From Octopus sinensis (taxonomy: Eukaryota): a DNA stretch of 60,390 nucleotides. The stretch lies in contig NW_021835015.1 of NCBI RefSeq assembly GCF_006345805.1, positions 1-60,390 of the forward strand. The letters are read 5' to 3'. The position numbers were made by a program, and so were the translations under genes. The stretch's first letter is position 1. Each line of letters starts with the position of its first letter. The notes below the pieces were generated by a model that was not told the origin of the DNA, did no database searches, and saw nothing but the letters and a program-made list of their open reading frames with translations. This document shows, piece by piece, positions 15,901 to 48,850 of the stretch.

Positions 15901-16177
15901 ATCTATTTATTTATTTATCCATTTATATATAGATATATACATATATTTCTATTTATTTTTTACTTGCTTATTTATTTATTTATTTAATTAATTTTAATTT
16001 ATTTTATTTCATTTCATTTCATTTCATTTCAATTTATTTTATTTATTTATTTATTTCTATTTTATTTTATTTTATATATTTTTTAACTTTATTATTTTTA
16101 TTGTATTTTATTTTATTTTATGTTATTTTTTTATTTTATTCTATTTTTTAAAGTAATAACACTTGGTAATTTATAAT
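12960..16177 (+). mobile_element. Penelope-like element family B, copy 1, 5' part (RT, GIY-YIG, proximal 3' UTR)
   Basis: FIQLDIQNYYSSI, TMGSPDS, GLYRDD, NYLDV; CNFRNRNQCVFGNEC; VVYQC..YIG..RLSYH; KCSLCINE; collinear with the reverse complement of 54700-57294. Confidence 0.92.
12969..15469 (+). pseudogene. PLE-B RT + GIY-YIG ORF, 5'-truncated and frameshifted
   Basis: ORF-track pieces 12969-13832, 13884-14411 and 14318-15469. Confidence 0.9.
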
Positions 16178-16273
16178 GGATCTTTTCATTTTCAAGGCCT
16201 GATTGTCAGATTTTTCTAGTTAACTAAATAATTTGAAACTTCGTATACTGGTAGAGTGTCTCAAAAGAAAACA
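16178..16273 (+). repeat. Left terminal inverted repeat (Merlin-like)
   Basis: Reverse complement of 46958-47055; begins GG. Confidence 0.85.
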
Positions 16274-16409
16274 CTAATTTCAACTTGTTTATTTGAGAAA
16301 AATGTATTTTATAACTTTAAACGTAGATTAAATCTGCGAATTTTAACCAATCGTATTGTTTGTTTTCATTTGAAATAATTAACTGCATTATCTTAGTGTG
16401 ACGTAGACA

Positions 16410-17370
16410 GCTGTGCGTAGGTCTGTGTTTTGTGTTTTTATAGAAAACGAATTTTGAATGTATTATTTTAATTTTTATTATTTTTTGAATTTATTAGTTT
16501 AATTTTTATTATTTAATTTCTGTGTTTTGTGTTTTTATAGAAAACGAATTTTGATGAATGTATTAGTTTAATTTTTATTTAGAGCGTGAAACCGCGTGCG
16601 TAGGTCTGTGTTTTGTGTTTTTATAGAAAACGACGCGTGCGTAGGTCTGTGTTTTGTTTTTATAGAAAACGAATTTTGAATGTATTATTTTAATTTTTAT
16701 TATTTTTTTGAATTTATTAGTTTAATTTTTATTATTTAATTTCTGTGTTTTGTGTTTTTATAGAAAACGAATTTTGATGAATGTATTAGTTTAATTTTTA
16801 TTAAGAGCGTAAAACCGCGTGCGTAGGTCTGTGTTTTGTGTTTTTATAGAAAACGAATTTTGAATGTATTAGTTTAATTTTTATTATTTAATTTCTGTGT
16901 TTTGTGTTTTTATAGAAAACGAATTTTGATGAATGTATTAGTTTAATTTTTATTAAGAGCGTGAAACCGCGTGCGTAGGTCTGTGTTTTGTGTTTTTATA
17001 GAAAACGAATTTTGAATGTATTAGTTTATTTTTTATTATTTTTTGAATGTATTAGTTAAATTTTTATTATTTAATTTCTGTCTTTTGTGTTTTTATAGAA
17101 AACGAATTTTGATGAATGTATTAGTTTAATTTTTATTAAGAGCGTGAAACCGCGTGCGTAGGTCTGTGTTTTGTGTTTTTATAGAAAACGACGCGTGCGT
17201 AGGTCTGTGTTTTGTTTTTATAGAAAACGAATTTTGATGAATGTATTAGTTTAATTTTTATTAAGAGCGTGAAACCGCGTGCGTAGGTCTGAATGTATTA
17301 GTTTATTTTTTATCATTTTTTTAATGTATTATTTAAATTTTTATCATTTAATTTCTGTGTTTTGTGTTTT
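16410..17370. repeat. Modular minisatellite inside the Merlin-like element
   Basis: Modules GCGTGCGTAGGTCTGTGTTTTGTGTTTTTATAGAAAACG and AATTTTGAATGTATTAGTTTAATTTTTATT, reshuffled in higher-order blocks. Confidence 0.93.
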
Positions 17371-17606
17371 TATTTCGACATAGAACGGTGAACCACAGCG
17401 TTGAGTTTGTTAACTCCGTTGACAAAACACACACCCAACAAATAGAGAGCACTTGGGCGTGTTTAAAACGGGGTAACAAGCGGCGTTGTGGTACACATCG
17501 TTCTATGATTGACTCGTATCTCTGCGAATTCATGTGGCGGCGCAGACACGAGAAAAGTGACCTTTGGGAGGAATTGCTGGCATGCATTAGAAATTTCTCC
17601 AATTAG
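17364..17606 (+). pseudogene. Merlin/ISXO2 (IS1016-like) DDE transposase C-terminal remnant
   Basis: [11 protein letters not shown]...[11 protein letters not shown]...G....[12 protein letters not shown] matches the ISXO2/Merlin C-terminal motifs, including the catalytic E. Confidence 0.85.
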
Positions 17607-18074
17607 TTAATCCTTTCTGCCCAAAATACACCCCTCATAGGTTTCAATCGAATTGTAAAATAATCATGAATATAGACTAGTTTCATTTGAACTGGGTTTA
17701 TTAGCAGATCATGGGTGCCTATTCCTCGCACGTAAGTGTTATAGGCCACAGCTGCATTGTGGATCATCCCCAGTTCTACTAGGGTTGTGGGTAACTACAA
17801 GTTATTTTTTTCTTTTTTTTTTGTCCAGCTTCTTCACATTCTGCGTAACAGTTTGTTTCCGCAGTGATCAATTCAAATAAGCATGCTGAAAAATTGTTAA
17901 TAACAAAAAATTGTTGATAAAAACATTTTAAAAGTTTATACAACATTATGGTGTAAATTATATTGTTGCCTCTTTCAGTTTCTTCAGAATCACTGCTTTC
18001 CCCTTTCATTCTTTTAAATATATTTGTGTAGGAATTGCCCTTCTTCATGCCCTTACTTACAATTCTTAGTGCAG

Positions 18075-18170
18075 GTTTTTTCCCTGCTGCCGTGGTCGAT
18101 AGATTAAGTACCCGTTGCTAACTGGGCACATTGTAATCGACTGGTCCACTTCCTCCAAAATTTCGGAACT
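18075..18170 (+). mobile_element. Degenerate SINE tail fragment
   Basis: GATAGATTAAGTACC..ACTGGG..TGTAATCGACT resembles the SINE 3' region at 34600-34650. Confidence 0.45.
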
Positions 18171-19789
18171 TTTCCCTAACTACCAAAAAAGTAAATTAAA
18201 AATTGGTTCAATCACTGTTTGTATCTTTCAATGACTCTTCTCTGTATTCTTTGCATTTGCATCACAAATTGTAATATCCTGCTTGCATCTATGTATCATG
18301 CTTCCAAATGTATTACACACCTGTTGTACAATTGCAGTGCTGCCATGGACTCTTCTTCTATTCTTTGCATTTGCATCACAAATTGTAATATCCTGCATTA
18401 AAATTGATTTACTTTTTATTTGGTTTTGTTTCTGTTTTTGTTTACATTGTGTGCATGCCTTGTTATGGTTTATGTTAGGGTTAGAGCTATGGTCTAGAAT
18501 TGGCAACAGATAGCATACTAAATTGTAAATGGCCACGTTTACTGTATGCTAAACTGGCACTAGAGATTTAATGAAACCGTTTACCTATCAGAATTTAAGT
18601 CATGAAAGGGTTAGTTAGCATTGTCAACGCACTTCACATTTCTCTGTTTCTGTGGGCAATGAAATAAAACACTAGATAAGGAGCGGGTCAATATAGTTGA
18701 CATTATTTCCTCCTATAAAATTTTTGGCTATGTACCTTTCTAAGAAATTCTTATTTGTATTAATATAAAGTGCGAGCAAGAGAACAGCTGCAGACTTTCC
18801 TAAACTGTTAATGTGAATGTAGATGATGTCTTTTTTCAACTTGTGTAAATTAATGTCTGATGAGAATGTGATTCCATGTAGAAGCTGCCATTCTGAAGAT
18901 AAATGATTGGCTAAAATATTTAGTAAAAGGGTTCTAGCTGTGAGACATGTTAAAGATGATGATGTGGGCTCAGTTTGATATAGTTTACAGCTTACTAATT
19001 CACAGGAATAGTAGTGGGTGTTAGGGGTTTTTTTCCCATGTTTTATTTGAACAATTTGGCTGGATAAAGGGGGCTGTATCCTTGCCTTTTACATTCCTTC
19101 TGAGACAAGAGGTGTGCCTTCAAAACTGGTAAGATTGACGTAGTTGATCTTGAATAAAATGTGTGGATGGCTGCAGAGGAAATAACATGGACAAGGGAAT
19201 TTCAGAAGACTGACAATCTGGTAAGAAAGAATTTAATGCTTAGTTTGCAGGTGAATTACATGCTACGTGATCTTCAAGCCTTTTGTCGCCAGATGCTGTA
19301 ACATGGTTTGTATCCAATATAGTAGTACCACCACTATTGCGATAATGGCCTGAAATATGTGGTACCAGTGTGATAAAATAAGATAATGCAGCAGCAATAA
19401 CAACATAACTATCTCTCAAGAACCAACAAATATTCCAAATGAACAAACCAACCCACACTCTCGAACTTCACTATGAAATAACACAAACTATATACACTCT
19501 CTCGGTTCAGTCCATTCCTCACAAGAGGGTACCTTGGCTCTCATCACAACACTGAGAGTGTAAGGGGTTACTAACTTTGTTCTGCCAACAAATTTCCATT
19601 TATTTATTCTTAAGCTTCTCTTACTGCTAGAAACCACCTCTGCCTGGTACTGGCATTTATGTGAACAATGTAGACAATTGACAAGTATCAAATGCCACAA
19701 TACATAAATTCATTATTTATTAAAATTATCTTCAATTGTAGAAGTATCATAATTACTAAATGGTAATCGATTAGCATATTCAGGGCCAT

Positions 19790-22058
19790 TTAGTCACCTA
19801 CCAATCTGGTAGACACACTAGTCAAATTGACTACATCCTCACTAGGAAACAGGAAAGACGACTACTTGTAAATGCCCAAACCTTCCCAGGTGAAGAATGT
19901 ACCCCACAATATAGACTAGTAGTTAGCGACTTCAGGATCAGGGCTAAATGGATGCCCAGAAGACGACCAGAATGGAGGAGAAGGGTCTGGAAGCTTAAGG
20001 ATCCTGCAAAAAGAGATTGAGAGACATATTACTCAAAGCTGTGGAAGACAAGTGGAGTTTTCTACAGGACAAACTTTTGAGGGCTAGTGACCAGATCTGT
20101 GGATGGTGCAAAGTCTCCTCTCAACCCAAGGTAACGTGGTGGTGGAACAATGTTGTTGACAGGGCTAGTAAGGAAAAGAAACAGGCTTTGAAGGACTGGA
20201 AGACCGGTGATAGCAGGGAATTGTATCAGACTGCCAAAAGGGAAGCTAGGAGATAGGTTTATTTGGCCAGAGGGGAAGCAGATAAGGAAAAATTTGCCAA
20301 TGTTCTGCGCTGTGATGACCAAAGACTTGAAGTATTTTCCTGTTGCCAGACAGTGTGTGAGAGAGAATCGCGATGTCCTAGGGGAGAAATGTGTCCTCAT
20401 GGGTGATGGTTCACTTGCTTTAAACGAAGCTGCAAAGAGACAGGTTTGGAGACGCCATTATGAAAGTTTGCTAAATAAAGTGAATGAATGTGAGAAAGAG
20501 AGTCTGCTGAATGCCGGCCCAACAGAGGGACCAGCTATCTATCTAAATTGACAGTGCCTTGGTAGGTAAAGCAATTAAGGGTATGAAGACAGGGAAAGCC
20601 CCCGGACAATCAGGAATCACCACAGAGATGCTCAAACTATCTAGCGGTGTCGGCTATAGCCTACTCAACTAGGTGATACATGAAGGAGTCATACCCAATG
20701 ACTGGTGTAGCAGCACCATAGTCAACTGCTAACAAAGGTAAAGGTGACGCATTAGATACAAATAATTACAGAGGTATCAAGTTGTTGGATCAGGTAATGA
20801 AAGTCACGGAGAGGGTCATAGCCCAAGTAATTAGGGAGAGAGGCAGTCTAGATGAGATGCAGTTTCGGTTCGTGCCAGGGGAAAGCACCACTGATGCTAT
20901 ATTTCTGATAAGACAGATGCAGGAGAAATAGCTAGTCCAAGATAAAACTCTGTACCTGGCTTTCATTGACAGGGTCCTCCGATCCCCTATCTGGTAGTCA
21001 ATGAGGAGACTAGGGATGGATGAATGTTTGAGAGCTGTACAAGCCATGTACAGTAAGGTGATGGTTGGCAACGAATACAGTGAAGAATATCGGGTAGGGG
21101 TAAGGGTCAACCTAAGATCAGTCCTCAGCCCCCTCTTATTCATTATAGTCCTCCAGGCAATAACAGAGGAATTCAAGACAGGCTGCTCCTCTATGCTGAT
21201 GACCTTGCACTAATAGCAGAGACACAGCCAGAACTGGAGCCAAAGGTTAGGGCGTGGAAGCAAAGTCTAGAATTGAATGGCCTTAGGGTTAACCTAGCCA
21301 AAACCAAAGTTTTAGTTAGTGTGCAGGCTGTCAAATCACAAACTCCTCTGTAGAAAAGGCATTGGTAGAAACTCCATACGATGCACCCGGTGTAAGCTAT
21401 GGACACATAAAAGGTGCAGCAATATCAAAGGAAGGTTAACTGGGAAAATTATTTCTTGTGTGTGGCAGATGCAGTGGGGCAATAAACACTGAAGGTGTTC
21501 AGAAAACAGCTTCCATTACATGCCTGGGGAAGAAACTAGAAGTAGTAAATACTTTCTACTACCTAGGCGACCAAGTATGTAGTGGGAGTGATTGTTCTGC
21601 GAGTGTAGCAACTAGAGTAATAATAGCCTGAGCAAATTCAGGGAGCTCCTACCTCTGCTGGCAGCTAAATGCCCCTCACTCAGGGGGAAAGGTGGACTGT
21701 ATGATGCATGTGTGTGAACTGCCATGCTATACGGTAGTGAAACATGGGCCATGAATGCCGAGGACATGCGTAAGCTTGCAGTATGCTTGAGTCAAGTAAA
21801 ACCAATACCGTAGCTGAAGGCCGGTGACCCGCTAGCTGGCTCCTGTGCTGATGAGACATGAAGAACACCCACTACACTCTCAGAATAGTTGGCGTTAGGA
21901 AGGGCATTTAGATGTAGAAATTATGCTAGACTAGATTGGAGCCTGTTGCAGCAGCTGGCTCTCCAAGACTTCAGTCAAACTGTCCAACCCATGCCATCAT
22001 GGAAAACGGACGTTAATCGATGATGATGATGATGATGATGACGACGACGACAACGACG
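19790..22058 (+). mobile_element. Decayed RTE-clade LINE with (GAT)n tail
   Basis: QIDYILTR, PGEECTPQ, VWKLKDP, WWWN, NYRGIKLL, STTDAIF, LSPLLFIIV, ADDLAL, C-x2-C..WTHKRC; many stops and frameshifts; ends CCAACCCATGCC..ATGGAAAACGGACGTTAA(TGA)n. Confidence 0.88.
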
Positions 22059-22729
22059 ATAATTATATTAGGAATAAAGTTGTGTGCAGGCAAGCGATTT
22101 GTAGTAGAGAGCAGTAGCGTTTGGAGCGAGCAAAGAGTTGGCGGCCAGCGATGCGATCGATCGAAAAGCTGTCATCTCGGCGGCAATATCGCCTGTGAGT
22201 GTGTGTCCGGTAGGGTACGTAACACACGGACGCATCGCGTTTATGCACGCGGCTAAGGCAGCTATTGCTCTCTAATAATCGCTTGCTTATTATTTACTTA
22301 ATGCATTCTTCATTTCGGCATACTGGGCAGAGATCGCATCGCATTCATGCACGCATTAGCTGTCTATCACCGCCTTAGCTATCATAAACAAACACAAGTT
22401 CATGTATGATATTAATCTTTCTTCTACTTCAATTATTACATGGTTTTCTCTTATAAAAATACACACATACAGGAGAAGTAAATTATACATATAATACTTT
22501 AAATGTGGCTCTCGATAAACAGTCAAAGTAATTACCTGATCAACAATGGGTTTTACTGCTAGTATATATGTATACTAGCAGTATACAGGTGACCAAATCT
22601 GATTTTCTACCTTGCAGTTAAGCAGATTCACTCAAGTATAATATTTTTTTTAAACTCAGAAAGTCTTACCAAAATTTTCTTAGCTGTATCAGTTTGTCTT
22701 GGAGTTGTAATGAGTCATCTGACTCTTGA

Positions 22730-24166
22730 ACATGAAAAAGTGGATTAATGGCTCCCACAAATTCACAAGTCTTTCAAGGCTCATGCCTTTTGACCCATCT
22801 TACTTCTGTGTGAAGCAATAGGGTTTTAAAATCTTCATCTTCACAGAATTGCATAAAAAATCTATTATTCACAGAGTTTGAATTGACAATGTTATTTGTA
22901 TGTATGGAAGTGTTGAGTGCATTTTCCATGTGTCCTCCAATATTCTTAGCAACCACATGCTGTCTGTGGATAATGCAACATATATTTAAAATGTGAGGAG
23001 CAACTGATTTCATTCTAGAAACAAAGCCTTTCACTTTTCCAGTCATAGCTGCAGCTCCATATGATGCAGTGTTGATCAAATTAGTCGATGGAATATTTTT
23101 ATCATTAAAATACTGCATTACTTCATTGAATATATCTTCTCCATTAGTTGTTTAAAAAAAAACTTTTAATGAATACCATTTCTTCCTTTATATCATCTTC
23201 ATGGTTGAATCTGACATAGACCAGAAGGATAACTTGGTTATGAATTGTGCTATCATCAACCTGGATAGAAAAATTGGTCGTTCGGAGAATTTCCACAATC
23301 TTCTTTCTCCTCAACAAAATTAGACATTTCATCCTGTCTTCTTGTAATTGTGTTATTTGAAAGTGGAATTGTACTCAGAGTAGGTTCAGCATCTTTTCCC
23401 AGAACCTCATTTGCACAAGCAGGCTTGACAAGATTCTCACCTTAAATCTGAGGTGCTGCAACCTTGGCAATAATTTCAGAAACCAAATAACTTGGTTTGA
23501 GTATCTTTACTTTTTCAATATTTATCTTCTTTACAAAGTCAGGTAGTTTGATTAGCTGTATTTTCTTTTTATTCTCAAAATATTCCCGACCTTTACCAAC
23601 AGATGATGGATGCCTTAATTTCTGGTGCTGCTCCAGCTTAACTTTCTTCATGGAATAATTTGTCATGATGGCATTATATTCAAGATACATAGGTTTTGAG
23701 TCTACAGATACAAAACCAAACACGATAAAATCTTCTTTGCATTTCTTCAGTTTTACCTTTTTAGCAGTTGGTTCAGATATTATTACAACTGATCATAAAA
23801 AAAATAAAAATAATAAATATTTTATTTCTATAAATTTAAAGTATCAAATTTATTATTAAACAATATTATGTAGTGATCTATTAAAAATATCGAATTTATT
23901 ATGAAACTGTTGTGATTATAAAATTTAAATTATGTAGTTCTTGATTGTAATATATCATTGATTATATATTATACATTATGATTCTTATGGAATAATTATT
24001 GAATTTTGTTTTCTTATTATTATTCTGTCTTCATATAAATATTATTAACTAACAGTGTCTTTATTATCGAACAATATGTGTAAATCTGAAATGGCTTCAA
24101 TTTTTTACGGCTACGAATTCTCTGGGGACCACTGGTAGGTTCCAGGGACCACATTGGGAATCACTG
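22730..24166 (-). mobile_element. hAT transposon (Buster/Charlie-type), truncated and decayed
   Basis: Terminus CAGTGATTCCCAA at 24166; FSIQVDDST, LLVYVRF, CIIHRQH, LLLHTEVRW. Confidence 0.87.
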
Positions 24167-24469
24167 CTTTAAACAATACTGGATGAAATGAATATCGAAA
24201 TTATTTACAAATTTTGTTAGTACATGAAACATGTTATAATATACAAGTTCCAGTAGAATATGTGACAAAGATAATATTCCTAGCTGAACTTATCCCCTTT
24301 AATTTTCTTGTACCAGAAACTTCCAGCCCCAGTCAATATTAACGCCAGATAACTTACACAGGACATTTTCATAATAAAGAAGAAAAAATTAAAAGGCTTT
24401 GATCTTTTTCTTTTAAACAAAAGAATTTTGATAAAAATATATACAAAGGATAGCTTTGTGGTTGAAAAA

Positions 24470-24640
24470 TTTGCTTCACACCCATGGGTTTCTGGGTTCA
24501 ATTCTGCTGTGTGGTATATTCGGTAAGTGTCTTTTACTGTAGTCTTAGGTTGATCAATGTCATGTGAGTCAAATTGGGAGAATGATTCTATGAACAAGCC
24601 CACAAGATGTGTTTGTGTGTATGTGTGTGTGTTCATTTAC
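24470..24640 (+). mobile_element. Degenerate tRNA-type SINE
   Basis: GGGTTCAATTCTGCTGTGTGG..GTAAGTGTCTTTTACTGTAG aligns with the SINE at 34360-34420. Confidence 0.6.
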
Positions 24641-25236
24641 ATGTTTACTGCTCTAGTATACTAGGCTATCAAAGGTTACTTTCAATGAACAGGCATCATT
24701 AAAATGGGACCCTGCCCTATGTTTGAAATTATCTCTAATATTGATAGGGTCAATGAAAGACACCCAAAGACAGTGCCTGAGCATGGTCATAGCACACTGA
24801 CTGAAATTAATAAAGAAGAAACAATTCTAGGTTTCAAAACTTTTTTAATGATAAACATCCAAATGTAAAGACAATGTTAAATGACTTTTCTCGGTGTAAA
24901 TGTATGCATACACGCATAAATGGAATTTCCTTCTAAGTAGAAGTTCACCCGAAACAAAAGTCATGGAAATTATTAGGATGAATATTCTTTGGGTGGGAGA
25001 TCAGAATAAATAAAAGAATGCAAGTGAATGTGTCATGTAAAGTGGGATGGGTGGGTTGGTGAGGTGCATAGCTGCCTTCAGAGACAACAGTAAAAAATCT
25101 TTGGTTGAATCATTCGCCCAAAACAATGAGATTTTTGTTTCTTTTTTAAGACATGTAATAGTAGACATGTAGTGGGGGAATATTTATATTGATAGGAATC
25201 ATTAATTAACAAGAAAATAATTATACATACATATAT

Positions 25237-25636
25237 ACTAGCAGTATCGCCCAGCGTTGCTCGAATTTGTAAGGGAAATAACTATATAAACATTTTTAGA
25301 GATGTAAAGTATAATAGCCATCTCAATATGGCTAACCACAAAGGGGGGGGGTGTTACTGTAGCTTTTTACGTTCTGAGATTTAATAATAAATTTTTAGAG
25401 AGTTACTTCCCTTATATATGCCAAAAATGCATTAAAAATGGGAAAAATTGAAGGTAATTTTTTTTTTAAATCGTAGCCTCATCGTAGACGCGCGCTTATA
25501 CCCAGAAGGGCTCAATATGAATCACGACTATAAGATACCCGGTTTCGGTTAAACTGCACCGCAAAATGTGGGAGTAGTTAGGAATCTAAATCGTAGGTGA
25601 CAGACAGCACACAACCTCAATTTTATATATAAAGAT
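25237..25636 (+). mobile_element. Non-autonomous Helitron-like element (400 bp)
   Basis: 5' ACTAGCAGTATCGCCC.GCGTTGCTCG shared with 50304; 3' TTTTATATATAAAGAT; no TSD. Confidence 0.6.
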
Positions 25637-26227
25637 ATATGCTTTTCTCAGACTATCCTTTTCCTTCTCTCCAGTCATTTTACGCTTTCCTTTCTGACAA
25701 AGAACCATGCTTGAAATGTCACACCCCCATCTTTTTTCCATCTTACTTTCTCTGAGCATCAATCTCATATATTCGCTGTGTACATCCTTTTGAATTTTGT
25801 TATTTTTCCTATTTTTGTTTTTTACTTGCCTACATATATATATATGTGTTATATATATATTATATATATATCAGCCTAACCCACAACCCACCTTTGCTTT
25901 CCCCACTCTCACCTGTCCCTCCACACACACACACCATGCACACACTAGCTGACTACTTCCCACACCCACACCATCATCCACACACCCATATATGCTCTCG
26001 TATACACACGCACGTGCACCTTCATTTTGGGATCACCACTACTTTATTATCTTCCCTCTTCCTAGCTCTCCTGTGTGACCCCTTTGTCCGGCATTCACCA
26101 TGATAGATCGCTAGCCACTACACTGTATTTTCTCTCCGTTTCTTTCACTTTTTCACTTCCCGAGCATTAACTAATACATCTGTTGTCTAAACCATCTGAG
26201 TTCGTCTTTTGTTTTTTTGTGAATTCT

Positions 26228-26333
<106 letters not shown>

Positions 26334-26639
26334 TACATATATGTATATATTGTGTGTACAGTTAGATGCACAACTGCTACTGTTGAGTTTCAAACTCCAT
26401 GCATAATATCAGCATCCAATCTGCTTCCAGTAAAGTGGTGTGGTTACTACTATACTTAGTAGTGTTACTGAACATATATAAAATAATGCAATAAAGTGTT
26501 GTCTTGATGATATACTGTGGTGTTCAGTAACCAATTGCACTTGGAACATAGGGTGCAAAGGTTAAAAATTTGAAAATAAACACAACTGAAATGTATGGAG
26601 AAAACAAACTTGCATTTAATCATTTCTTCAGCATATATA

Positions 26640-37450: not shown

Positions 37451-37489
<39 letters not shown>

Positions 37490-38246: not shown

Positions 38247-38679
38247 TGAAACTAGAAAAAAAATATATATATATACATATATATATGTACATATATATAA
38301 TATATATATATATATATATAATAATATATATATATAATATATATATTATATATATATATATTATTATATATATATATATATATATATAACATACATACAT
38401 ATATATTTCCATCATATATATACTATATCATATGTATATATACATATAAATATCATCAAATACATGTATGTATTTGAATATGTCTTGTTTGATTTACATG
38501 TTTTTCGAGTCAAGTATGTTTTAAATGAAAAAATGATTGAAGTATTCTTTCACAACCAGATGCCTTTCCTGTCATTAACACTTGACTGTGTTTTAATAAG
38601 GAATCTCTTAATTACACATGTCTTGAAAGGCTTGAAGTAAGCAGACAATTTGTCAACCAGAGAAATGACAACAGCAAAC

Positions 38680-38870
38680 CTTGTAGCTTGCAACATTTAT
38701 AGAGCACAAACATAAACAGATGTACACACATATTATAGATAGATTTCTTACAGGTTCCATCTATCAAATTCACTCACAAGGATTTGGTCAATCTGGCTAT
38801 CATAAGTGATACTTGGTGAAGTTGCCATGCACTGGGACTGAACTCAAAACCATATGATTAAGAAGGGAAC
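38680..38870 (-). mobile_element. Degenerate SINE
   Basis: CAAATTCACTCACAAGG..CACTGGGACTGAACTC matches the reverse complement of the SINE head. Confidence 0.6.
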
Positions 38871-38959
38871 TAACGTGCCTGTGCCTTCTATCAGTCTTTC
38901 TTTACGTATGTATGCGTGCATATATATATATATATATATATATGTATTTATATATATAT

Positions 38960-38990
<31 letters not shown>

Positions 38991-38991
38991 G

Positions 38992-39022
<31 letters not shown>

Positions 39023-39111
39023 TACACACATATATAGTATGTAGATAGGGTTGTAATCGAAGCCGTGTCCTCGTGAAGCACACCTGTATATTCCAGTATG
39101 CCAACATAGTA

Positions 39112-40380
39112 CAAGGGGCGTTCAATAAGTAATGCCCCTGACCCACTTCCCATAGCAGTAGAGCAACGAAACTTGGCACAGTTATTAGTCTTTTTCTACA
39201 TAGAAACCACCCAGAGTTATGCATTTCTCCCATTGCTTGATGCAGCTCTGGGACCGTTTTTGTAGAAGACCCCAGCTTGGTCATCCAACCACGACGTGAC
39301 TTCAGAAATCAAGGCTGCATCATCTGGGAAACGCTTTCCTTTCAAAAACAACTTCATAGCTGGGAAGAGGTGAAATTCAGAGGGTGCAAGGTCAGGATAG
39401 TAGGGGGATGGTGGAGGAGATCATAGCCGCACGCCTGTGCTTCTGATCTGGCGACACGCGAGTTGTAGACCGGAGCGTTGTCCTGCAGGAGGAGGATACC
39501 TTTGCTGATCTTGCCCCGCCTCTTGATTTTGATAGCTTCTCTTAATTTCCTCAAAAGTGAAGCATAAAAGGCTCCTGTAATTGTGGTACCCTTTGCCAGG
39601 AAATCTGTCATCACTATTCCGTCCTGGTCCCAGAAGACTGTGAGCATAACCTTGCCAGCGGAGGGCTGCACCCTTGTCTCCTTTGGAGGAGGTGAGTCAC
39701 GGTGCTTCCACTGCATTGACTGGGCTTTGGTCTCTGGATCATAGTGATGGACCCAGGTTTCATCCTGTGTAATCAGTCTTTTGAAAAATTTTGACTCATC
39801 TCCCAATTCATCCTCGAGCACTCGACTCATTCTTGCTTCTGGAAAGGTGTGAGCAGCCTGGGAATCCATCTGGCAGACACCTTTTGCATATGCAAATGGT
39901 CATGAATGATAGATTCCACAGACCCGGTACTAATCTTGACCTCATGGGCTATTTGGCGAATAGTTATGCATTGATCTAAAATGGCAGCCTCAACTTGACG
40001 GACAGATACCTCATCAATGGCAGAAGGGGGCGACCAGATCTGGGAGCTGTTTCCACAGAGTTCCGACCATGTTTGAATTCATGATGCCAGCGTTTTACAA
40101 GGTCATATGATGGAGCATCATCACCATAATTTACTTTCATTTTATCAAAAGTCTCCCGTGGTGTGCATCCCTTCAAATACAAAAACTGGATCACTGCTCG
40201 ACACTCAACAGGATCCATTTCACACTTGACTCAGTTCAAACACCTGTAAATCAGAAACCACAATTAGTTCAGAGCTGTAATTTGCCACTTCATCTATAGA
40301 GATATAAATGATTGCACATGGATCAGCTAGATCAAACAATTGCAAGTGGGTCAGAAACATTACTTATTGAACGTCCCTCG
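39112..40380 (-). mobile_element. Mariner transposon (1.27 kb), TA TSD, frameshifted transposase
   Basis: TIR C(A/G)AGGG(G/A)CGTTCAATAAGTAATG at both ends, flanked by TA; PRSGRP, ITQDETWVHHYDPE, KVMLTVFWD, LQDNAP. Confidence 0.92.
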
Positions 40381-40605
40381 TATGTAGATGTTATAATTGT
40401 GTGAGGTATGTATAAGAGTAGAAAAATATTGGAAAATAATATTTGCAGAGTAATTACGCATCAAAACAGTAGACTGGAAAATATTTTTAGTATTATTTAT
40501 TCACCATTGCACATGTTTCATTTGCTAGTACGAGTTAGAATATTATACATGTAAGAGAAAATTATAAAATATCTTTATTAAAAACTCCTCAGACAGCGAA
40601 TCAAT

Positions 40606-41824
40606 TATCAGATTGAATAAAAAATAAGCAACGTTTTGAACCATGAAGAATTTGTACCAGATTTTTGCAGGGTTTTGAATTTTTGTTAAACATTTTTTTG
40701 CAGTTGTCTGATAATACAGATATAAACTTACCCAAATGCATCAATAAATTAACATTTATATTTTTTTCCCATTTTACAATCATCTGAAAGGGAACGAATG
40801 TGAAAGTGCGATATTTGAGCAGTTTTGCAATTCAACTTCAAAAAAGGATGTAAAGCAGCTAAAACTGTTCATGATATCAATGAAACATTTGGTGGGGAAA
40901 TGACCAGTGAAAATGGTTTAAATGATTTTGCAGATTGTAAGCATTATGGACGCCCATCTGTCATCGATGACAGTCAAGTAGAGACTGTCATTGAGAAAGA
41001 TCCATATAAAACCACTTGAGAACTGGCAAAATAACTTCAAGTTAGTCAGAAAACTGCCTGCAACCATTTGCATGCAATCAGAAAATCAAAAAAGCTCGAC
41101 AAATTTGAATGAAAATCAGAAAATTCTTATTGCTTCTTCTCCGCAACCAGTCCAATCCATTTCTTGACCATATTGTAACTTGCAATGAAAAGTGGATCTG
41201 TACAATAAAAAACGTTCTTGCAGTGGTTGGAGCAAAATGAAGCACCGAAAACCTTCCCTAAGCCCAAGCTCTTCAAAAAGAAGGTTATGGTGAGTGCTTG
41301 GTGGTGTACTTTTGGAATCATCCATTATAACTTTTTAAAATCTGGAAAAAACATTACTGCAGTAACATATTGTCATGAAATTGCCAAAATGAAAGAAAAA
41401 CCGCTACTCCTCTGTCCCAGACTGGTCAACAGAAGAGGGCCAATCATTCTTCATAACAATGCTCGACCATAAATTTCACTAATGATGCTCCAAAAGTTGA
41501 AGGAACTTGGCTATGAATTTCTTCCCCACCCAGCTTATTCCCCAGACCTTTCTCCTACCGACTACCACTTTTTCAAGCACCTTGATGGTTCCTGAAAGAG
41601 AAGGAGTTCAAAATCAAACTGATGCTGAAACTGTGTTCAAAGAGTTCATCAGCTCCAGAACTCCAGATTTTATGTTACCAGAATAAACAAACTTGTAACT
41701 CATTGGCACAAATGTGTTGATTGTAATGGTACTTACTTTGATGAATAAAATTTCCACATTGCTGAAATATATTGTGATGAATTTCATGTTTCAAAACGTT
41801 GCTTACTTTTTACTCAGCATGATA
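40606..41824 (+). mobile_element. Second mariner transposon, decayed
   Basis: Imperfect TIRs ..AAAAAT/GTAAGCAACGTTTTG; EKWILY, KKVMVSAWW, LHNNARP, PAYSPDLSPTDYHFF. Confidence 0.88.
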
Positions 41825-42181
41825 ATACTCTCTGATTTTCTGTCTGAAGACTTTCTAACAGAAGATATCTTACATGTTTCTCTGTTAATACAATTTTGTA
41901 CCCCCTATTAGTAAATGAAACATGTGTAATGGTGAATAAATAATACCAAAAATTTTTTCTTATCTCCTGTTTTGATATATGTATATGTTTATTATATACA
42001 AGATATACTATATTATCATTAATTGATGGATGCAAAGAAATAAGAAACTTGAAGTAGTCAACTCAAAAATATAGTTGAAGTAGGTAGAGTGGGGAAGTAA
42101 ATGTCAATAAGAACTAACTCAGTCTTGCCAAACAGATGCCAGGACCAAAAAGTGATGATGATGATGATGATCATGATATAT

Positions 42182-42230
<49 letters not shown>

Positions 42231-42284
42231 TATATACATGTGTGTGTGTATATATATATATATGATATATGGCGTAAAAAGAAA

Positions 42285-42700
42285 GAAAATGGTAAATCTA
42301 GTTGAGTTCCTCATGAAGATAACATGGATGCTGCTCGAGCTCAAAAGATTGGCTGTTATGAAAACCTCCTAGAGGATGTGAAGACACAGGCTGGAAAGCA
42401 GAGCATTTTTCAATCAAGTTGGATGTAGAGGGTTTGTTGGACAGTGTGAAGTGACTATTGCCATCATTGACATAATTCATCGTAAAGCAAATACCACTAG
42501 GAGTAATATCCAAACTACACTGGAAAAGGCAAACCACTGGATTTGGTTAGAAAGCAACAATGAGCAATGGCTAGAAGAATATTGAGTGAAACCTGATGAC
42601 CAGTTGATCTAGCAAGCAGGGTCTCATTTCAGTGAGGGGTGCCCAATGATGCTGTCAAGAGATAGGTCCCGAAATGGCAGGCATTCTCTCCTAATGGCTC
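42285..42700 (+). mobile_element. 3' fragment of an RLE-type non-LTR element (HERO-like)
   Basis: Frameshifted VE..PHEDNMDAARAQK..Y..L..GWK..VGCRGFVG..EKANHWIWL resembles the HERO restriction-like endonuclease C-terminus. Confidence 0.55.
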
Positions 42701-42859
42701 CATAAACTTGCTAGCATCTGGTATGCAGAGCTTTCAACAGGTAACACTTGCATCTGCATGTTGTTTGCAAAAAATATTAAAAAATATATATTCGACCCTG
42801 TGCTTGAGGAAACCAATTGATTCAAGTACATCAACATCAAAAATCAATGGAAATTGTAG

Positions 42860-43170
42860 TTGTGATCCCTGTGCCGGTGGCATGTCAAAAGCAGCGTCCG
42901 GATGTGGCCAGTGCCAGCGCCGCCTTCTCTGGCTTCCATGCTGGTGGCATGTAAAAAGCACCAATCCAATTGTGGCCATTGCCAGCCTCGCCTGGCACGT
43001 AAAAAGTACCCACTACACTCACGGAGTGGTTGGCATTATGAAGGGCATCCAGCTGTAGAAACACTGCCAGATCAGACTGGAGCCTGGTGCAGCCTTCTGG
43101 CTTCCCAGATCCCGGTTGAACCGTCCAACCCATGCTAGCATGGAAAACGGACATTAAACGATGATGATGA
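42860..43170 (+). mobile_element. Non-autonomous element sharing the RTE 3' tail
   Basis: CCCACTACACTC..CCAACCCATGCTAGCATGGAAAACGGACATTAAAC(GAT)n, as at 21870-22040. Confidence 0.75.
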
Positions 43171-44143
43171 TATTCATGATCCGCATTATCATCACTTTTC
43201 TATGCTGGCATTAGTTGGGCAGAACTGAGCCAGTACCTCCACCTCACTCCCAACTGAGTTGCAGGACTACATTTTGTTCATACTTTCTCTTTGCAACATA
43301 AGTTTCTGTGTCTGGATTTAACACCAACCACCTTACAAAAAATGTATTGTGTGTGTGAGGGTGTAGTTGGTATAACAAATAGGAGAAAAACTATTCAATA
43401 ATATAGTAGGGGGTAAATATTTTAGTTGATCCAGTAGCATCATAGACAATGTCTTTGTGTTGTCCCTATCCCAAATTAACAATTGGTGTTGTTTTGTTTA
43501 TGTCCTTGCAATTTCACGGTTTAGCAAACGACACTGATAAATAACAAACTAAAAATATGTAGTGGGCGCAATTAGTTTCACTAACCTTTCAAGGTGGTGC
43601 CACAGTTCAATAACTGAAACAAGTAAAAGAGGTAATGTATGAATGTGTATATATAAGAACTACACACACAAACCTATCTGTAGATAGATAACAAAAAGAG
43701 AGGAGAGACACAGGCAGTAATAGAGAAAGCTAGTATATTAGTCAGCAATTGTTAACTTTTGAGAAAATCTAAAATATATAAGTTTAGTTGTATGTCTGTA
43801 TCCAACAATGTATATTATTCTCAGACTTGCACATTATTTGAAATACAAAAAGGTCACAAATTCCAGAACTTTCACATATATTGCTCAGATGAAACTTGGC
43901 TGAGTGACCAAGTGTTTATGTTCAGTAATCTTCCATTTATTAGACAAGACAAACAGGTAAGCACTGAGGTGCGACTGGCACTTTATTTATGATACTGAGA
44001 ATGATGGATTTTAGTTCAAATAAGAATGCAATTATTTTGTAACATTGTTACAGTAGTTTGTTTTAATATTAAAAGTGATGTAATTCAATTTAAAAGATCT
44101 CTGATATCACTGTTAAAAACCAGTGTTCAATTCTTGTTTCATC

Positions 44144-44344
44144 TTAACTCCTTAACATTCAGATGGTTATTCACATTGCTTTGAATTAATCATGCATTAC
44201 CTGTAGCTTGAGATTTAATTGATTGATTGCTTATTTTTAAATTGACTTTCTGGATAGGTCAAGAGGCCAGGCCTGACCGGTTTGAACATAAAACAGGTAG
44301 AATATTTGGGCCAGATATGGCCGGTTTAAATGCTAAAAGGAGAA
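44144..44344. mobile_element. Possible piggyBac-type MITE remnant
   Basis: TTAACTCCTTAACATT ... AATGCTAAAAGG, imperfect termini. Confidence 0.35.
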
Positions 44345-45585
44345 GAAACATCAATTATTAAATCTTCCGCTACATGGAGAGGAAGCCACTCTGTCATGTG
44401 TTAACATCATCAGATGATCTAGTTCTATTCCCAATGTTTCAATAATGTGAAGTGTCATCATGTAGTCAACATCATTTAACATCCATGTTTCATGCTGGCA
44501 TGGGTTGGACAGTTTGACGACGAAGAATTAATTGTTATGTCCAAATATACAATGAAACATCAATGCTTCATTGCATATATATAAGCAGATAAAAAAAATC
44601 ATAGTGACTGCCTGCAAGCGAGTATGACTTAGTAATGTATACCATGCTTTCACTCATTATTTTAAGTGTCTACATAGTTAGAAGCAGATAGACACTCTAT
44701 TGACCTTCTCACCTTTATCTCATAATTTTGTTGATCCAAACACCTGATTAATAATTAAAGAAAGTAGTTATTTTACTAAGACTGTTCAAATTGATTATGT
44801 TTATTACTTGGGAACATGACTATAAAAGAATTTAGCATCAAATTGATTCCAACTTACATTTTCCACAGCTATTCTAACAACAGTGTAATAATACTTATGT
44901 AACCTCTCAGAGGAAACATGACTCTTCCTTCACTCTCTCCACCATTCATTTATGGTTTGAGAATAATTCTATAATTGTTGTAAACTGGAATGGAACTTAC
45001 TCTCTTTCTGCTCACATCCATTCTCCATTTAATGCTACTTGGTTTGCATCTTTTAGAGAGATAGATTAGATATAATAAACTCAAAGAGCAACTAGAAAGT
45101 GAAAGTAGTATCTAACTTAGGATGTCTCATAGATAGTGGTGGCAATGGTGTTGGAGGTGGTAGATGTGGTTATCATGGCAGTGGTTGTGGTGGTATAGTG
45201 GTGACAGTGGATGTGTATGATGGCAGCAATTATAGTGTTGGTGTTTTTGCAGAGGTGGTGGTGGCGGCAGTGGATGATGATGATAATGATGATGATAGAA
45301 GTAGTGGCATTGATTATGTTAGGATGTCTCAGTAGTGGTTGTGAAGATGATTCTGATATTGATAGTCTTTGCATTGAGGTGGTGGCAGAGTCAGAGTAAA
45401 TAATAAGAGCCCAGTTAACACAAGATTCTTAAATTTCGGAGATCATAAGATAGAAAGCAAGAAGTTAAAAGTTCCAATACTGGCCCAATTCCTACACCCC
45501 AGATTCTTCAACTATTTTATAAGAAAGGGGTTAATGGCAGGTTGTATAACAAAAAATACATAAATAAATTACTGTTTTATTCTTT

Positions 45586-45680
45586 GGCAACACGTGTTTC
45601 ATGAGGTACATCCTCGGGTTCCTAAACCACATCTTGTTTCCCTGGAACCCCTCTCAAGATGCCACCCCAATCATCAAGCC
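45586..45680 (-). ncRNA. Decayed hammerhead-like motif at a PLE-type end
   Basis: GGC-UUGAUGA-..UGGGG/CCUCA..-GAAA-C-ACGU-G-UU-GCC followed by AATAAA; C3U change and poor cleavage triplet. Confidence 0.45.
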
Positions 45681-45794
45681 CTTATAACTTTATCAACGTT
45701 CAATACAATAAACAATATTTTAATTTTTAAATCCCATAAATATGTGCAAAATGAGTATGTTTAAATTGGGCAATCTTGGGCCTCTGCCCTCTTG

Positions 45795-46279
45795 GGCAAT
45801 CTTTCGTTTGTAGTAGACCTTTCCGTCGATTTCCGTAAAAAACTTTTATTTTTTTACATATGGGCTTGCGGTAAGTTTTGAAGTAATGAGAGCGAAAGAG
45901 ACTAAGAGAAAGCGAATTGTATGAGGAGGGAAGTTCTTTTGAAGTTACCGTTCATGGGGAGCATTGATGTACATGTGTGTGTGTGCGTGTGTTTGTGTGT
46001 TTCATGGGGTGTGGGAGACAGAAAGTATGTTGTGTAAGTGAAGTACTTCTGTTAGTGTGTGTGAAGAGACAGAGAGAGTAATGTGTGAAAGAGAGATAAC
46101 TGAAATTTTTTACTCGGTGTATGTGTATATGTATGTATGCATGTATGTGTGTGTGTATGTATCTATGTATGTGTGTGTGTGTGTGTTTATGTATGTGTGT
46201 GTATGTATGTGTGTGTGTGTGTATGTATGTATGGCCGATTCAGTGTTTACATTATTTCGAGTTAAAACGAAAGATTACC
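45795..46279 (+). mobile_element. MITE with TIR GG(C/T)AATCTTTCGTT
   Basis: Termini GGCAATCTTTCGTT and AACGAAAGATTACC. Confidence 0.6.
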
Positions 46280-46355
46280 AAAAAGAATTTTGTCTATATC
46301 TTCGATCACTGTCATTATTCCATTGATTCAACCTCATTATTTTCTACATAGCAAA

Positions 46356-46564
46356 GGTAATCTTTCGTTTTAACTCGAAATAAGGTAAACACTGAATCGG
46401 CCATACATACATACACACACATACATACACACACATAAATACACACACACACATACATACATAGATACATACACACACACACATACATACATATACACAT
46501 ACACCGAGTAAAAAATTTCAGTTATCACGGAAAGGTCTACTACAAACGAAAACGAAAGATTGCC
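46356..46564 (-). mobile_element. Internally deleted inverted copy of the same MITE
   Basis: Reverse complement of 46095-46279 joined to the reverse complement of 45795-45829. Confidence 0.65.
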
Positions 46565-46957
46565 AAAGATAAAAAGTTACAGAAATAAAAGTTATACGAA
46601 TAAAGTAAGGAATAAAAATCACAAAAAATATACGAAAATTTACAAAAACTAAGTTAGTTATATAATATATCAGTTTAATATATAAGTTAGTTAATAATAT
46701 ATTTAAAAAAATGTGAATTAAAACGAAAGGAATACGGTAACCGGGTGTTTACATTTCACGTATGTTAACTACGTCAGCAAAATAGCCGTTTACATTTCAC
46801 GTATGTTAACTACGTCAGCAAAATAGCCGTTTACGTCTATTGAGACGGAGTAAATAATATGAAGCCGAAAGACCGAATACCATTGGTTAAAATTCTAATT
46901 ATTAAACAACGTTAAACTTAGAAATTACAATTCCGTTTTCATTCTGGTTTACAGTTA

Positions 46958-47055
46958 TGTTTTCTTTTGACACATTCTACCAGTATACGAAGTTTCAAAT
47001 TGTTTGGTTAAGTAGGAAAAATCTGACAAATCAGGCCTTAAAAATGAAAAGATCC
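46958..47055 (-). repeat. Right terminal inverted repeat (Merlin-like)
   Basis: Ends ...AAAATGAAAAGATCC, followed by TTTATAAT. Confidence 0.85.
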
Positions 47056-48850
47056 TTTATAATTAATTTAATTTATAATTATTTACTTATATATTATTTA
47101 ATGGTAAGTCCGGTTAACTTATTGTATATGTATTTATACGTCCATTAATATTTAAATATATATATATATATGTATGCGAATGTTTGCATACGCAGCAAAG
47201 GTGAATGTGCGTATGTTTGTGAATATGCACGAATGTACGTGTGTGTGTGTGTGTGTGTGTGTGTAGATGTTAATATAATTTTCCTGTACCTATATTGGTT
47301 TGCTGGTGAGAGGTTGATTGGAAATAAAATGGTAATACAACGATATAGGAGTTTCAGTGATGTGATGCTATGTTTAAGAAATGTACAGTATTATTTTGAT
47401 TATATATCGTAGAACAATAACGTATTTTGACTATTTACAATTAATATACTTGTATCTTAATAATAGTATTTCTGTTAACTTATTGTGTATGTATTTAATA
47501 CGTCCTTTGATGGGCATACATGTATTTTATATTGTATAATTTAGTAAATATTTGAATAGAAACCATAGTGGAATGTAAAGATATAGAATTTCTTTTTAAT
47601 GGTAGAATAGTTTGTTTACGGAAAATACGGTGTTATTTTAATTATGTACCTTATGATAATTTACATTCTTCATCGGGGTATAAATGTATGTATGTATGAT
47701 TGCATATACGAATTTATGAATATATGTGAGTGGATCTGTTTGTAAGCATGTATGTGTGTGTAAGTGTGGGCTAATATCTCTTATGTTATGTTGTGATTTG
47801 GCTGCGTATGTGCGCACGTTTGCAAGTGTGCGCGTGTGGATGTCTCTCAACTAACCAACCGTAAAAAACAATTGTAATTTAAATTTAAAAGTATAAGCCA
47901 ATCAAATTCCGCCGTTCGTTTCATAACTATTTCGGAAATTAATAATATATTAGTGTCACAATAGAAATTATTAATTCACATTCATCTGTGGAAATTAACA
48001 CCATGTAAACTGGACTGCTTTTTGTATGTATGTGCAAATATTTAATGCCTTGCATAATACTGTGGTATTATGTTGGTCCCTAGTTTTGCTACTATATTGC
48101 TAATTATGTGATATATGTATTGTTTTATTAGTATTAATGTTATTAGAAATAAGAACAATGATATCGGTAGCATTAATGATATTGATAACAGTATTGATGT
48201 TAACATTAATGACTTTTTGTAAATTAATATAAGGTAATACTGACTCTATATATCTGCATTGAAGTATGAATATGTCTATGTTCTCTACGTTGTAATACCT
48301 TAATATTAAGTTGAAAAACATTGAATATGGAACATATATATATATTATTGATTTATATTATTTGTATTATTATGTATATGTGTATGTATAAGAATATGAG
48401 TATATGCACTCATATATATATATGTAAATGATTTTTTATGGGTATGTACCCACACTTATATGAGTATACGCGTATATGTAATTTGGTTTATACTTTAGAA
48501 TCTCCGAAGAGGCCTTAAGATATCTTTGTAAATGTCTCATTTTTAACTTCATATTGACATACTATACATGGCTAATATAGGTGAAATGAGGCATATTTAT
48601 CTGCATGGCCGAAACAGCTGTAAGATATAGTGTATATTTATATTTATATCTATTTATATTTATTTATTTATATCATCTTATAATGATTGTACCTATTGTG
48701 TTGTATTACTCATTCAGGTACGTTGTTTTGTTATATATTTTTATGTTTAACCTTAATGTTCTTATGTAGTGGTTCAATAAGGTATGTGATTGGGTATTAT
48801 CTGGTAGTTGATTAATGATTTAGATGTCTTTCTCCATTTTCTGATTGTGT
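47056..48850 (+). mobile_element. PLE-B distal 3' UTR (likely continuation of 12960-16177)
   Basis: Collinear with the reverse complement of 53030-54707, starting exactly at the TSD-equivalent position; ends in (TA)n. Confidence 0.82.
48500..48626 (+). ncRNA. Minimal hammerhead ribozyme (PLE-B), U4C core variant
   Basis: ATCT-CCGAAGA-GGCC..GGCC-GAAA-C-AGCT-G-TA-AGAT. Confidence 0.8.

What the first reader, a model, noticed from the sequence alone, without database searches (positions are those of the whole stretch)
16170..47063. 30.9-kb Merlin-bounded segment with a perfect 8-bp TSD splits a Penelope element: possible giant composite transposon or macro-transposition
Seen: GG-starting TIRs at 16178-16273 and 46958-47055 (~92% identical by eye, first 15 nt identical); TTTATAAT directly outside both; an ISXO2/Merlin transposase C-terminus just inside the left end. 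PLE-B sequence stops at the left TSD and resumes at the right TSD, and the paralogous PLE-B has a single empty site (CTTATAAT, 54700-54707, minus strand). Known: Merlin elements have GG termini and 8-9 bp TSDs but are normally a few kb long. Inference: either ~29 kb of insertions piled into one Merlin, or two Merlin ends mobilised a block of pre-existing DNA. The cargo includes heavily decayed, truncated RTE, Buster, maT and HERO relics that look at least as old as the host PLE and TIR pair, which favours capture of old DNA. A third option is two separately truncated copies of a PLE-B lineage carrying a Merlin passenger.
Basis: partly seen in the sequence, partly recalled or inferred. Interest (0 to 1): 0.88.

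Follow-up and report, generated by a model that had tools for sequence, protein, structure and literature searches.

The report
Old Merlin transposon swollen by later insertions
A dead, internally deleted Merlin DNA transposon sits inside a Penelope-like retroelement in an octopus genome, and its inside has most likely been stretched to 31 kb by later repeat insertions, which is ordinary for so repeat-rich a genome and is not shown to be a giant transposon.

Summary
GG-starting inverted ends (16178-16273 and 47055-46958; 92% over 98 nt) are flanked by a perfect 8-bp duplication, TTTATAAT. A mechanical scan of the segment finds no other end pair with a perfect duplication.

The Merlin part is a deletion derivative: left end, a 0.96-kb tandem array, then only the last ~75 codons of an IS1595/Merlin transposase (17373-17606, + strand). 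There is no second transposase piece and no internal end anywhere in the window.

The ~29 kb between the stop codon and the right end contains LINE, mariner, PLE and SINE-like relics, 6.6 kb of tandem repeats, and about 7 kb that I could not assign. At least 4 kb of it is young: inverted arms are 97-98% alike, and copies in O. sinensis are 92-94% identical.

Nothing positively supports movement as one block. Nesting is the simplest reading (about 0.78). A macrotransposon cannot be excluded from this window alone (about 0.1). The passenger model is disfavoured.

The parts
16170..16177 (.). Left copy of the 8-bp target-site duplication TTTATAAT
   Evidence: identical to 47056-47063. The paralog has a single CTTATAAT at 54700-54707.
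16178..16357 (+). Left terminal inverted repeat of the Merlin element (well-matched core 16178-16273, starts GG)
   Evidence: 91.8% over 98 nt, E 1.8e-28; 79.7% over 192 columns.
16413..17373 (+). Subterminal tandem-repeat array (units of about 152-223 bp) in the place of the missing N-terminal two thirds of the transposase gene
   Evidence: TRF periods 152/183/223, 71-98% matches; self-matches.
17373..17606 (+). Transposase remnant: the last ~75 codons of an IS1595/Merlin DDE transposase, open, ending in a stop codon
   Evidence: tblastn with eight relatives gives this single hit (E 2e-14 to 6e-26). In the near-full-length relatives (285-298 aa) it matches residues ~211-296, the C-terminal end. 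Pfam DDE_Tnp_IS1595 positions 94-152 of 153, E 3.2e-4, 21.1 bits, below the 27-bit cut-off; the profile finds 4158 relatives.
17607..46565 (.). About 29 kb of fill between the transposase stop codon and the right arm: TE relics, tandem repeats and about 7 kb unassigned (roughly 18120-19770, 24000-26800, 43200-45790)
   Evidence: Where Merlin sequence ends on each side could not be fixed because no second copy of the family was available.
19775..22060 (+). LINE (RTE-like by eye) relic with a (GAT)n 3' tail
   Evidence: RVT_1, E 3.8e-11, mapped to 20998-21350; 3' tail sequence. Its last ~200 nt recur at 42993-43180 and in L001 354-559.
28037..28794 (+). 5'-truncated third copy of the PLE-B 3' tail
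   Evidence: 75% to host tail 48169-48882; 66% to paralog 53469-53000.
28837..33066 (.). Young material: a perfect-centre palindrome (28926-29168 / 29169-29411) followed by a PLE-like complex with inverted and direct partial copies
   Evidence: arms 97%, 97% and 98% complementary; 92-94% identity to O. sinensis locus L001 (3-353, 2590-2929)..
34142..36859 (.). SINE-like 414-bp dimer followed by 1.7 kb of (TA)n/(CA)n-type microsatellite
   Evidence: period 414, 2 copies, 86%; 83% to 52964-51978.
37592..38289 (+). LINE 3' tail fragment
   Evidence: 72.5% to 5129-5845, the tail of the LINE whose 640-aa ORF carries Exo_endo_phos_2 and RVT_1.
38847..40230 (-). Mariner relic M1 (frameshifted; 3' part invaded by a microsatellite)
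   Evidence: Transposase_1 E 8.7e-24, HTH_48 E 7.3e-8.
40460..41976 (+). Mariner relic M2 with inverted ends of about 190 nt
   Evidence: Transposase_1 E 1.7e-17; ends 40460-40647 / 41976-41783, 78%.
45794..46565 (.). Foldback-type MITE with microsatellite-bearing arms and an internally deleted right arm; no flanking duplication seen here
   Evidence: relatives at L001 15368-16543 (flanked by (TA)n there) and at window 51283-51421.
46566..47055 (-). Right arm of the Merlin element: AT-rich subterminal stretch with a 41-bp tandem repeat (46747-46834) and the right inverted repeat (46876-47055, core 46958-47055)
47056..47063 (.). Right copy of the 8-bp target-site duplication TTTATAAT
12918..16169 (+). 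Host Penelope-like element (PLE-B), 5' part up to the insertion site
   Evidence: 13526-15536 is 86% identical to 57294-55312; best protein hit is O. sinensis P0003 at 78%..
47064..48882 (+). Host PLE-B, 3' tail resuming after the insertion
52790..57294 (-). Paralogous PLE-B copy with the uninterrupted (empty) site at 54700-54707

Best explanation
A non-autonomous Merlin (IS1595-superfamily) DNA transposon was cut and pasted into the AT-rich 3' tail of a Penelope-like retroelement copy. A Merlin transposase supplied in trans did this, and 8 bp (TTTATAAT) were duplicated. The element consisted of a left end, a tandem-repeat array, the last ~75 codons of the transposase and a right end.

The copy then stayed in place. 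The stretch between its stop codon and its right end took one insertion, then more insertions into those insertions: LINE, mariner, PLE-like, SINE-like and MITE elements. Microsatellite growth and local deletions or duplications were added. The two ends now lie 30.9 kb apart, and the element is an immobile relic.

Shown: the insertion itself, its Merlin character, its deletion-derivative structure, and the repeat-rich and partly young make-up of the fill.

Inferred: that the fill arrived after the insertion rather than with it.
For: - Ends, duplication and empty site.
- Anatomy of a single element: one transposase remnant only, on the + strand, so the order left end -> stop codon -> right end is that of one Merlin. 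There is no third end in the window.
- Make-up of the fill: 6.6 kb (21%) is tandem repeat, of which 4.7 kb is microsatellite that can grow in place. RVT_1 and two mariner transposases are detected. Several pieces belong to families also present outside the segment or in O. sinensis.
- Youth of some fill: at least 4 kb looks younger than the Merlin end pair (arms 97-98%; 92-94% to copies elsewhere; the Merlin ends are 92% alike).
- Background: about 66% of the O. vulgaris genome is repeats. Its recently active, near-full-length Merlin copies average about 2.6 kb (11 insertions, 28,998 bp; PMC13282606). Heavy nesting into old elements is therefore expected, and a scan that picks out striking cases will find the extreme ones.
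Against: - No cargo element could be shown to carry its own flanking duplication. The mechanical scan found none with a perfect 8-bp repeat, and the MITE next to the right arm shows none.
- By eye, the leftmost fill (about 17700-18117, minus strand) looks like the N-terminal part of a piggyBac-type transposase whose continuation would run into the Merlin left arm. That would need an extra deletion. No tool supports the piggyBac assignment.
- About 7 kb of the fill is unassigned and could be unique DNA.
- All the growth fell in the short stretch between the stop codon and the right end, and none in about 5 kb of flanking host element.
- Mariner M2's ends are as diverged as the Merlin ends, so M2 is not demonstrably younger.
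Confidence: 0.78

Rival explanations
1. Macrotransposon. The left end of one Merlin remnant and the right end of another, about 29 kb apart at a donor locus, were used together by a Merlin transposase. The whole block of pre-existing repeat-rich DNA was then pasted into the PLE-B tail, as happens with Ac macrotransposons in maize.
For: - One perfect 8-bp duplication flanks the whole 30.9 kb.
- The fill looks like ordinary octopus intergenic DNA, with truncated relics and about 7 kb unassigned.
- No own duplications were found for cargo elements.
- By eye, a truncated relic abuts the left arm.
- Macrotransposons of 10.3 and 28 kb that excise and reinsert with 8-bp duplications are documented for Ac (PMC9910405).
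Against: - There are no internal Merlin ends and no second transposase remnant anywhere in the window, so both donor elements would have had to be one-ended fragments.
- The single remnant and the right end are oriented as parts of one element.
- At least 4 kb of the fill is young.
- Such events are far rarer than nesting.
- No second copy or donor could be looked for.
Confidence: 0.1
2. Filler capture. The deletion derivative arose by interrupted gap repair after an excision, with template switching that copied foreign DNA into the element's interior. Part of the fill therefore moved with the element, and the rest was nested later.
For: The element is an internal-deletion derivative: a tandem array replaces the first two thirds of the transposase gene. 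Filler DNA in deletion derivatives is established for Ac/Ds and P elements (my own knowledge).
Against: Known fillers are tens to hundreds of bases, rarely a few kb, not 29 kb. Nothing in the window marks a filler junction. The test needs other copies of the family.
Confidence: 0.05
3. Passenger model. A PLE-B lineage already carried this Merlin, and the window holds retro-copies of that lineage. The 8-bp repeat would then be inherited, not made at this locus.
For: Only the general possibility. PLE-B is a multi-copy family.
Against: - The paralog in the window is uninterrupted at the site, and the O. sinensis copy in L001 appears to be as well. Its low-identity (58%) alignment leaves no room for a large insert.
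- The 5' and 3' host parts show the same relationships (closest to the paralog, L001 the outlier).
- A 31-kb or even 2-kb DNA transposon inside a retroelement transcript would be unusual.
Confidence: 0.02

Closest known systems
Merlin superfamily DNA transposons (eukaryotic relatives of bacterial IS1016/IS1595; Feschotte 2004, as summarised in PMC8101967)
   Same: Ends start with 5'-GG. Inverted repeats fall within the known 24-462 bp range. The target duplication is 8 bp. The transposase remnant is of the DDE_Tnp_IS1595 type. Tandem repeats inside some copies are also reported (PMC8101967).
   Different: Only the last quarter of the transposase is left. The ends are 30.9 kb apart, against about 2.6 kb for near-full-length Merlin copies in O. 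vulgaris (PMC13282606).
Nested transposable-element clusters in repeat-rich genomes (my own knowledge; about 66% repeats in O. vulgaris, PMC13282606)
   Same: An old element keeps intact ends and its duplication, while its interior is filled by later elements, some of which are themselves interrupted.
   Different: The order of events could not be proved here. Own duplications of the inner elements were not found, and about a quarter of the fill is unassigned.
Ac macrotransposons of maize (hAT superfamily; PMC9910405, citing Huang and Dooner 2008)
   Same: Two transposon ends in the right orientation bound tens of kb, and an 8-bp duplication flanks the whole.
   Different: In maize the movement was observed directly, and the inner parts of the flanking elements are known. 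Here there are no internal ends, no second element body and no evidence that the block moved. The superfamily also differs.

Membership tests
Merlin superfamily | Terminal inverted repeats (24-462 bp) with terminal 5'-GG | tested here: met
   Both ends start GGATCTTTTCATTTT; 92% over 98 nt, weaker to about 180 nt. Criterion from PMC8101967.
Merlin superfamily | 8- or 9-bp target-site duplication | tested here: met
   Perfect TTTATAAT on both sides. A single copy of the site (CTTATAAT) is in the paralog.
Merlin superfamily | Transposase with the DDE_Tnp_IS1595 domain | tested here: inconclusive
   Only the C-terminal ~75 residues are present. Pfam gives E 3.2e-4 and 21.1 bits, below the 27-bit cut-off. 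tblastn against eight relatives found with the profile gives E 2e-14 to 6e-26, and hits of the later word-indexed search with the same family profile are annotated PF12762. The two aspartates of the catalytic triad lie in the missing part, so the copy cannot encode an active enzyme.
Merlin superfamily | Other genomic copies sharing the same ends (a family) | not testable with these tools
   No octopus genome could be searched by DNA. No close Merlin protein from an octopus was returned.
Macrotransposon / composite transposon | Two separate element bodies or at least internal ends at the inner borders of the carried DNA | tested here: not met
   No third end and only one transposase remnant in the whole window.
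Macrotransposon / composite transposon | Evidence that the block moved as a unit (second copy, donor footprint, cargo older than the insertion) | not testable with these tools
   This needs genome-wide and cross-species searches. Pairwise identities cannot date insertions. Intrinsic clocks are indistinguishable (my counts from the alignments).
Nested insertion cluster | Host element with intact ends, a duplication and contiguous flanks | tested here: met
Nested insertion cluster | Inner elements younger than the host insertion, each with its own target duplication | tested here: inconclusive
   At least 4 kb looks young. No inner element with a perfect 8-bp duplication was found. The MITE at 45794-46565 has none.
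Penelope-like elements (host, 'PLE-B') | Reverse transcriptase followed by a GIY-YIG endonuclease | tested here: inconclusive
   Pfam finds nothing in the host ORFs. Homologues carry PF26215, some PF28514 and one PF00078. By eye the ORFs show GLYRDD and, after a Cys-rich motif, VVYQC...VYIGAT...R...H, which fits a GIY-YIG endonuclease (my own knowledge).

The most novel reading that the evidence does not exclude
The 30.9-kb segment is a true Merlin macrotransposon. Two one-ended Merlin remnants mobilised about 29 kb of pre-existing repeat-rich DNA in a single cut-and-paste event. That would be the first such case for this superfamily and for a mollusc.
Probability: 0.1. Interest if true: 0.5.

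Novelty: new member of a known kind. Interest (0 to 1): 0.15.

Why it matters
As read here, it matters little. It is a clean, datable example of a Merlin insertion in an octopus genome, with its empty site preserved 8 kb away, and of how far nesting and microsatellite growth can stretch an old element.

If the minority reading were right, Merlin transposases could move tens of kb. DNA transposons could then reshuffle large blocks in cephalopod genomes, as Ac does in maize.

Tried and rejected
- **Second copy of the Merlin family.** A search with the 77-aa remnant gave two short hits. A profile search of 1.8 billion representatives gave many relatives but no genomic context. A profile search of the word-indexed collection returned no octopus protein and at most 62% identity. 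So I could not fix which bases of the segment are Merlin.
- **Exact look-up of ten window ORFs** (both junctions, cargo, flanks): none is in the collection. The source or orthologous locus could not be fetched.
- **Anatomy of a full-length relative** (P0275, locus L002): no clear inverted ends. A 50-nt direct repeat flanks the gene region instead. I dropped this.
- **Other TE assignments.** Pfam and PDB searches for the hAT-like, piggyBac-like and Tc1-like pieces and for the GIY-YIG pieces found nothing, even at E up to 10 for most of them. These assignments rest on reading by eye.
- **RNA features.** Rfam and tRNA scans of the window found nothing.
- **TIR-plus-duplication scans.** A scan without microsatellite masking gave only microsatellite noise, and a reversed-sequence control gave more hits than the real sequence. 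The masked version was used.
- **LINE duplication.** A k-mer search for a duplication around the LINE relic found only (GAT)n.
- **Dating.** I abandoned dating the cargo from pairwise identities. Two copies of a family are about equally far from their common ancestor whenever they inserted, so this cannot order the events.


Full report
**1. The observation**

The left boundary reads ...cacttggtaa|TTTATAAT|GGATCTTTTCATTTTCAAGGCC. The right boundary, on the + strand, reads ...GGCCTTAAAAATGAAAAGATCC|TTTATAAT|taatttaattt.

The two ends are inverted copies: 91.8% over 98 nt, the first 15 nt identical, E 1.8e-28 against the window. Similarity continues more weakly to about 180 nt.

I joined the flanks, keeping one copy of the 8-mer, and aligned them to the reverse complement of 51.5-58.5 kb. 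A single HSP runs from 15839 through the junction to 47789, against 54939-53951. The paralog carries a single CTTATAAT at 54700-54707.

A mechanical scan of 16000-47200 looked for 12-nt inverted ends with a perfect 8-bp flanking repeat outside microsatellites. It returns only this pair.

**2. Source organism and host element**

The translated host ORFs find an Octopus sinensis protein at 78% identity as the best hit, then several hundred relatives. The locus of that protein is L001 (O. sinensis CM016888.1, 5,008,481-5,029,994). It carries a third PLE-B copy, 75-78% identical in the coding part.

The 3' tail of the L001 copy aligns colinearly with the joined flanks: 15400..48862 against L001 11848-14345. 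At 58% identity the alignment is weak, but the lengths leave no room for an insert of kilobases.

In both the 5' part and the 3' part, the window's host copy is closest to the paralog, and L001 is the outlier. The two host parts therefore belong to one lineage. Two other copies appear uninterrupted at the site, which speaks against the passenger model, though the sample is small.

Pfam does not recognise the host ORFs. The Penelope-like assignment rests on motifs read by eye and on the family of its homologues.

**3. The Merlin part**

Pfam places the ORF at 17352-17603 in DDE_Tnp_IS1595, positions 94-152 of 153, but below the curated cut-off.

I built a profile from the remnant and its two first hits. 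It finds 4158 relatives, and in near-full-length relatives of 285-310 aa the match lies at the very C-terminus.

tblastn of eight such proteins against the whole window gives one hit only, 17373-17600 on the + strand. In the near-full-length relatives it covers residues ~211-296. The next best hit has E of 0.09 or worse.

Upstream of the remnant lies a 0.96-kb tandem array. The element is therefore an internally deleted, non-autonomous Merlin.

The order is left end, array, transposase C-terminus with stop codon, and, 29 kb later, the right end. That is the order of a single element. The window holds no third end.

The criteria used (5'-GG, inverted repeats of 24-462 bp, 8-9 bp duplication, IS1595-type domain) are those summarised in PMC8101967.

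**4. The fill between the stop codon and the right arm**

Supported by tools:
- A LINE relic with RVT_1 at 20998-21350 and a (GAT)n tail.
- Two mariner relics at 38.8-40.2 kb (minus strand) and 40.5-42.0 kb (plus strand).
- A LINE tail at 37592-38289.
- A third, 5'-truncated PLE-B tail at 28037-28794.
- A palindrome and a PLE-like complex at 28.8-33.1 kb.
- A SINE-like dimer at 34.1-35.1 kb.
- A foldback MITE at 45794-46565, with relatives in L001.
- 6.6 kb of tandem repeats, of which 4.7 kb is microsatellite.

Read by eye only, with no tool support:
- A hAT-like relic at 22.8-23.8 kb.
- A Tc1-like fragment at 26.9-27.1 kb.
- A possible piggyBac-like N-terminal relic at 17.7-18.1 kb.

About 7 kb remains unassigned.

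**5. Nesting or block movement**

Against a composite of two elements, there are no internal ends and no second transposase remnant.

- The palindrome arms are 97% alike.
- Arms within the PLE-like complex are 97-98% alike.
- These pieces are 92-94% identical to copies at an unrelated O. sinensis locus. They are no more diverged than the Merlin ends are from each other.

For the remaining cargo I could not order the events:
- Pairwise identity between two copies of a family does not depend on when each inserted.
- The only intrinsic clock, mariner M2's long ends, is indistinguishable from the Merlin ends (my counts from the alignments).

Some points sit less comfortably with simple nesting:
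- No inner element shows its own perfect duplication.
- The MITE next to the right arm has none.
- The leftmost relic, if real, is truncated against the Merlin arm.
- A quarter of the fill is unassigned.

All of these are also what deletions and decay produce in old repeat clusters.

The background favours nesting. About 66% of the O. vulgaris genome is repeats, and near-full-length Merlin copies there average about 2.6 kb (PMC13282606). A screen that reports striking cases will preferentially find extreme ones.

Block movement by two ends is a real mechanism, with Ac macrotransposons of 10.3 and 28 kb documented (PMC9910405). It is rare, and here it needs two one-ended donor fragments.

I put nesting at about 0.78, a macrotransposon at about 0.10, filler capture at about 0.05 and the passenger model at about 0.02.

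**6. Comparison and novelty**

The thing is a member of the Merlin superfamily by its ends and duplication, and by what is left of its transposase. It behaves as a host of a nested repeat cluster. It resembles a macrotransposon only in outline, and the defining inner structure was tested and not found.

It is a new member of a known kind and is of low interest unless the genome-wide and cross-species tests listed under the decisive next steps favour block movement.

Noticed in passing
window 5845-12751: Near-perfect inverted duplication of a different, young Penelope-like element. Arms 5845-7315 / 12751-11277 are 99.0% identical and arms 7619-9252 / 11265-9634 are 99.5%. It has long open frames (529, 381 and 342 aa) and looks like a head-to-head dimer of a recently active element.
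   Followed up: partly
window 1838-5845 and 57320-60390: Two copies (87% identical) of a LINE. The left copy keeps a 640-aa open frame with Exo_endo_phos_2 and RVT_1 domains. Each lies next to a PLE-B copy.
   Followed up: partly
window 28037-28794 + 33.0-35.6 kb; 48169-49540; 53469-51978: The PLE-B 3' tail is followed by the same TA-rich complex microsatellite and/or the 414-bp SINE-like dimer in three places. This suggests either a preferred target or a composite repeat unit.
   Followed up: no
window 28926-29411: A palindrome with no spacer: 243-nt arms, 97% complementary. A single-arm relative lies at L001 2590-2929 (92%).
   Followed up: no
window 45794-46565; L001 15368-16543: Foldback-type MITE family with microsatellites inside its arms. 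The O. sinensis copy sits in a (TA)n tract. The window copy has an internally deleted right arm and no visible flanking duplication.
   Followed up: partly
proteins P0001 (73 aa) and P0138 (70 aa): The closest relatives of the transposase remnant (59-74% identity) are themselves short C-terminal-only ORFs. This hints that a deletion-derivative family with this remnant is widespread. No genomic context was available for either.
   Followed up: no
L002 3631-3680 and 5620-5669 (ENA metagenome contig): A full-length Merlin-type transposase gene (316 aa) lies between two 50-nt direct repeats rather than between obvious inverted ends. Unexplained.
   Followed up: no
window 17782-18117, minus strand: An ORF contains ...LFELITAETNCYAE..., which by eye resembles the start of the piggyBac transposase domain. 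Its continuation would run into the Merlin left arm. Pfam and PDB searches give no support.
   Followed up: partly
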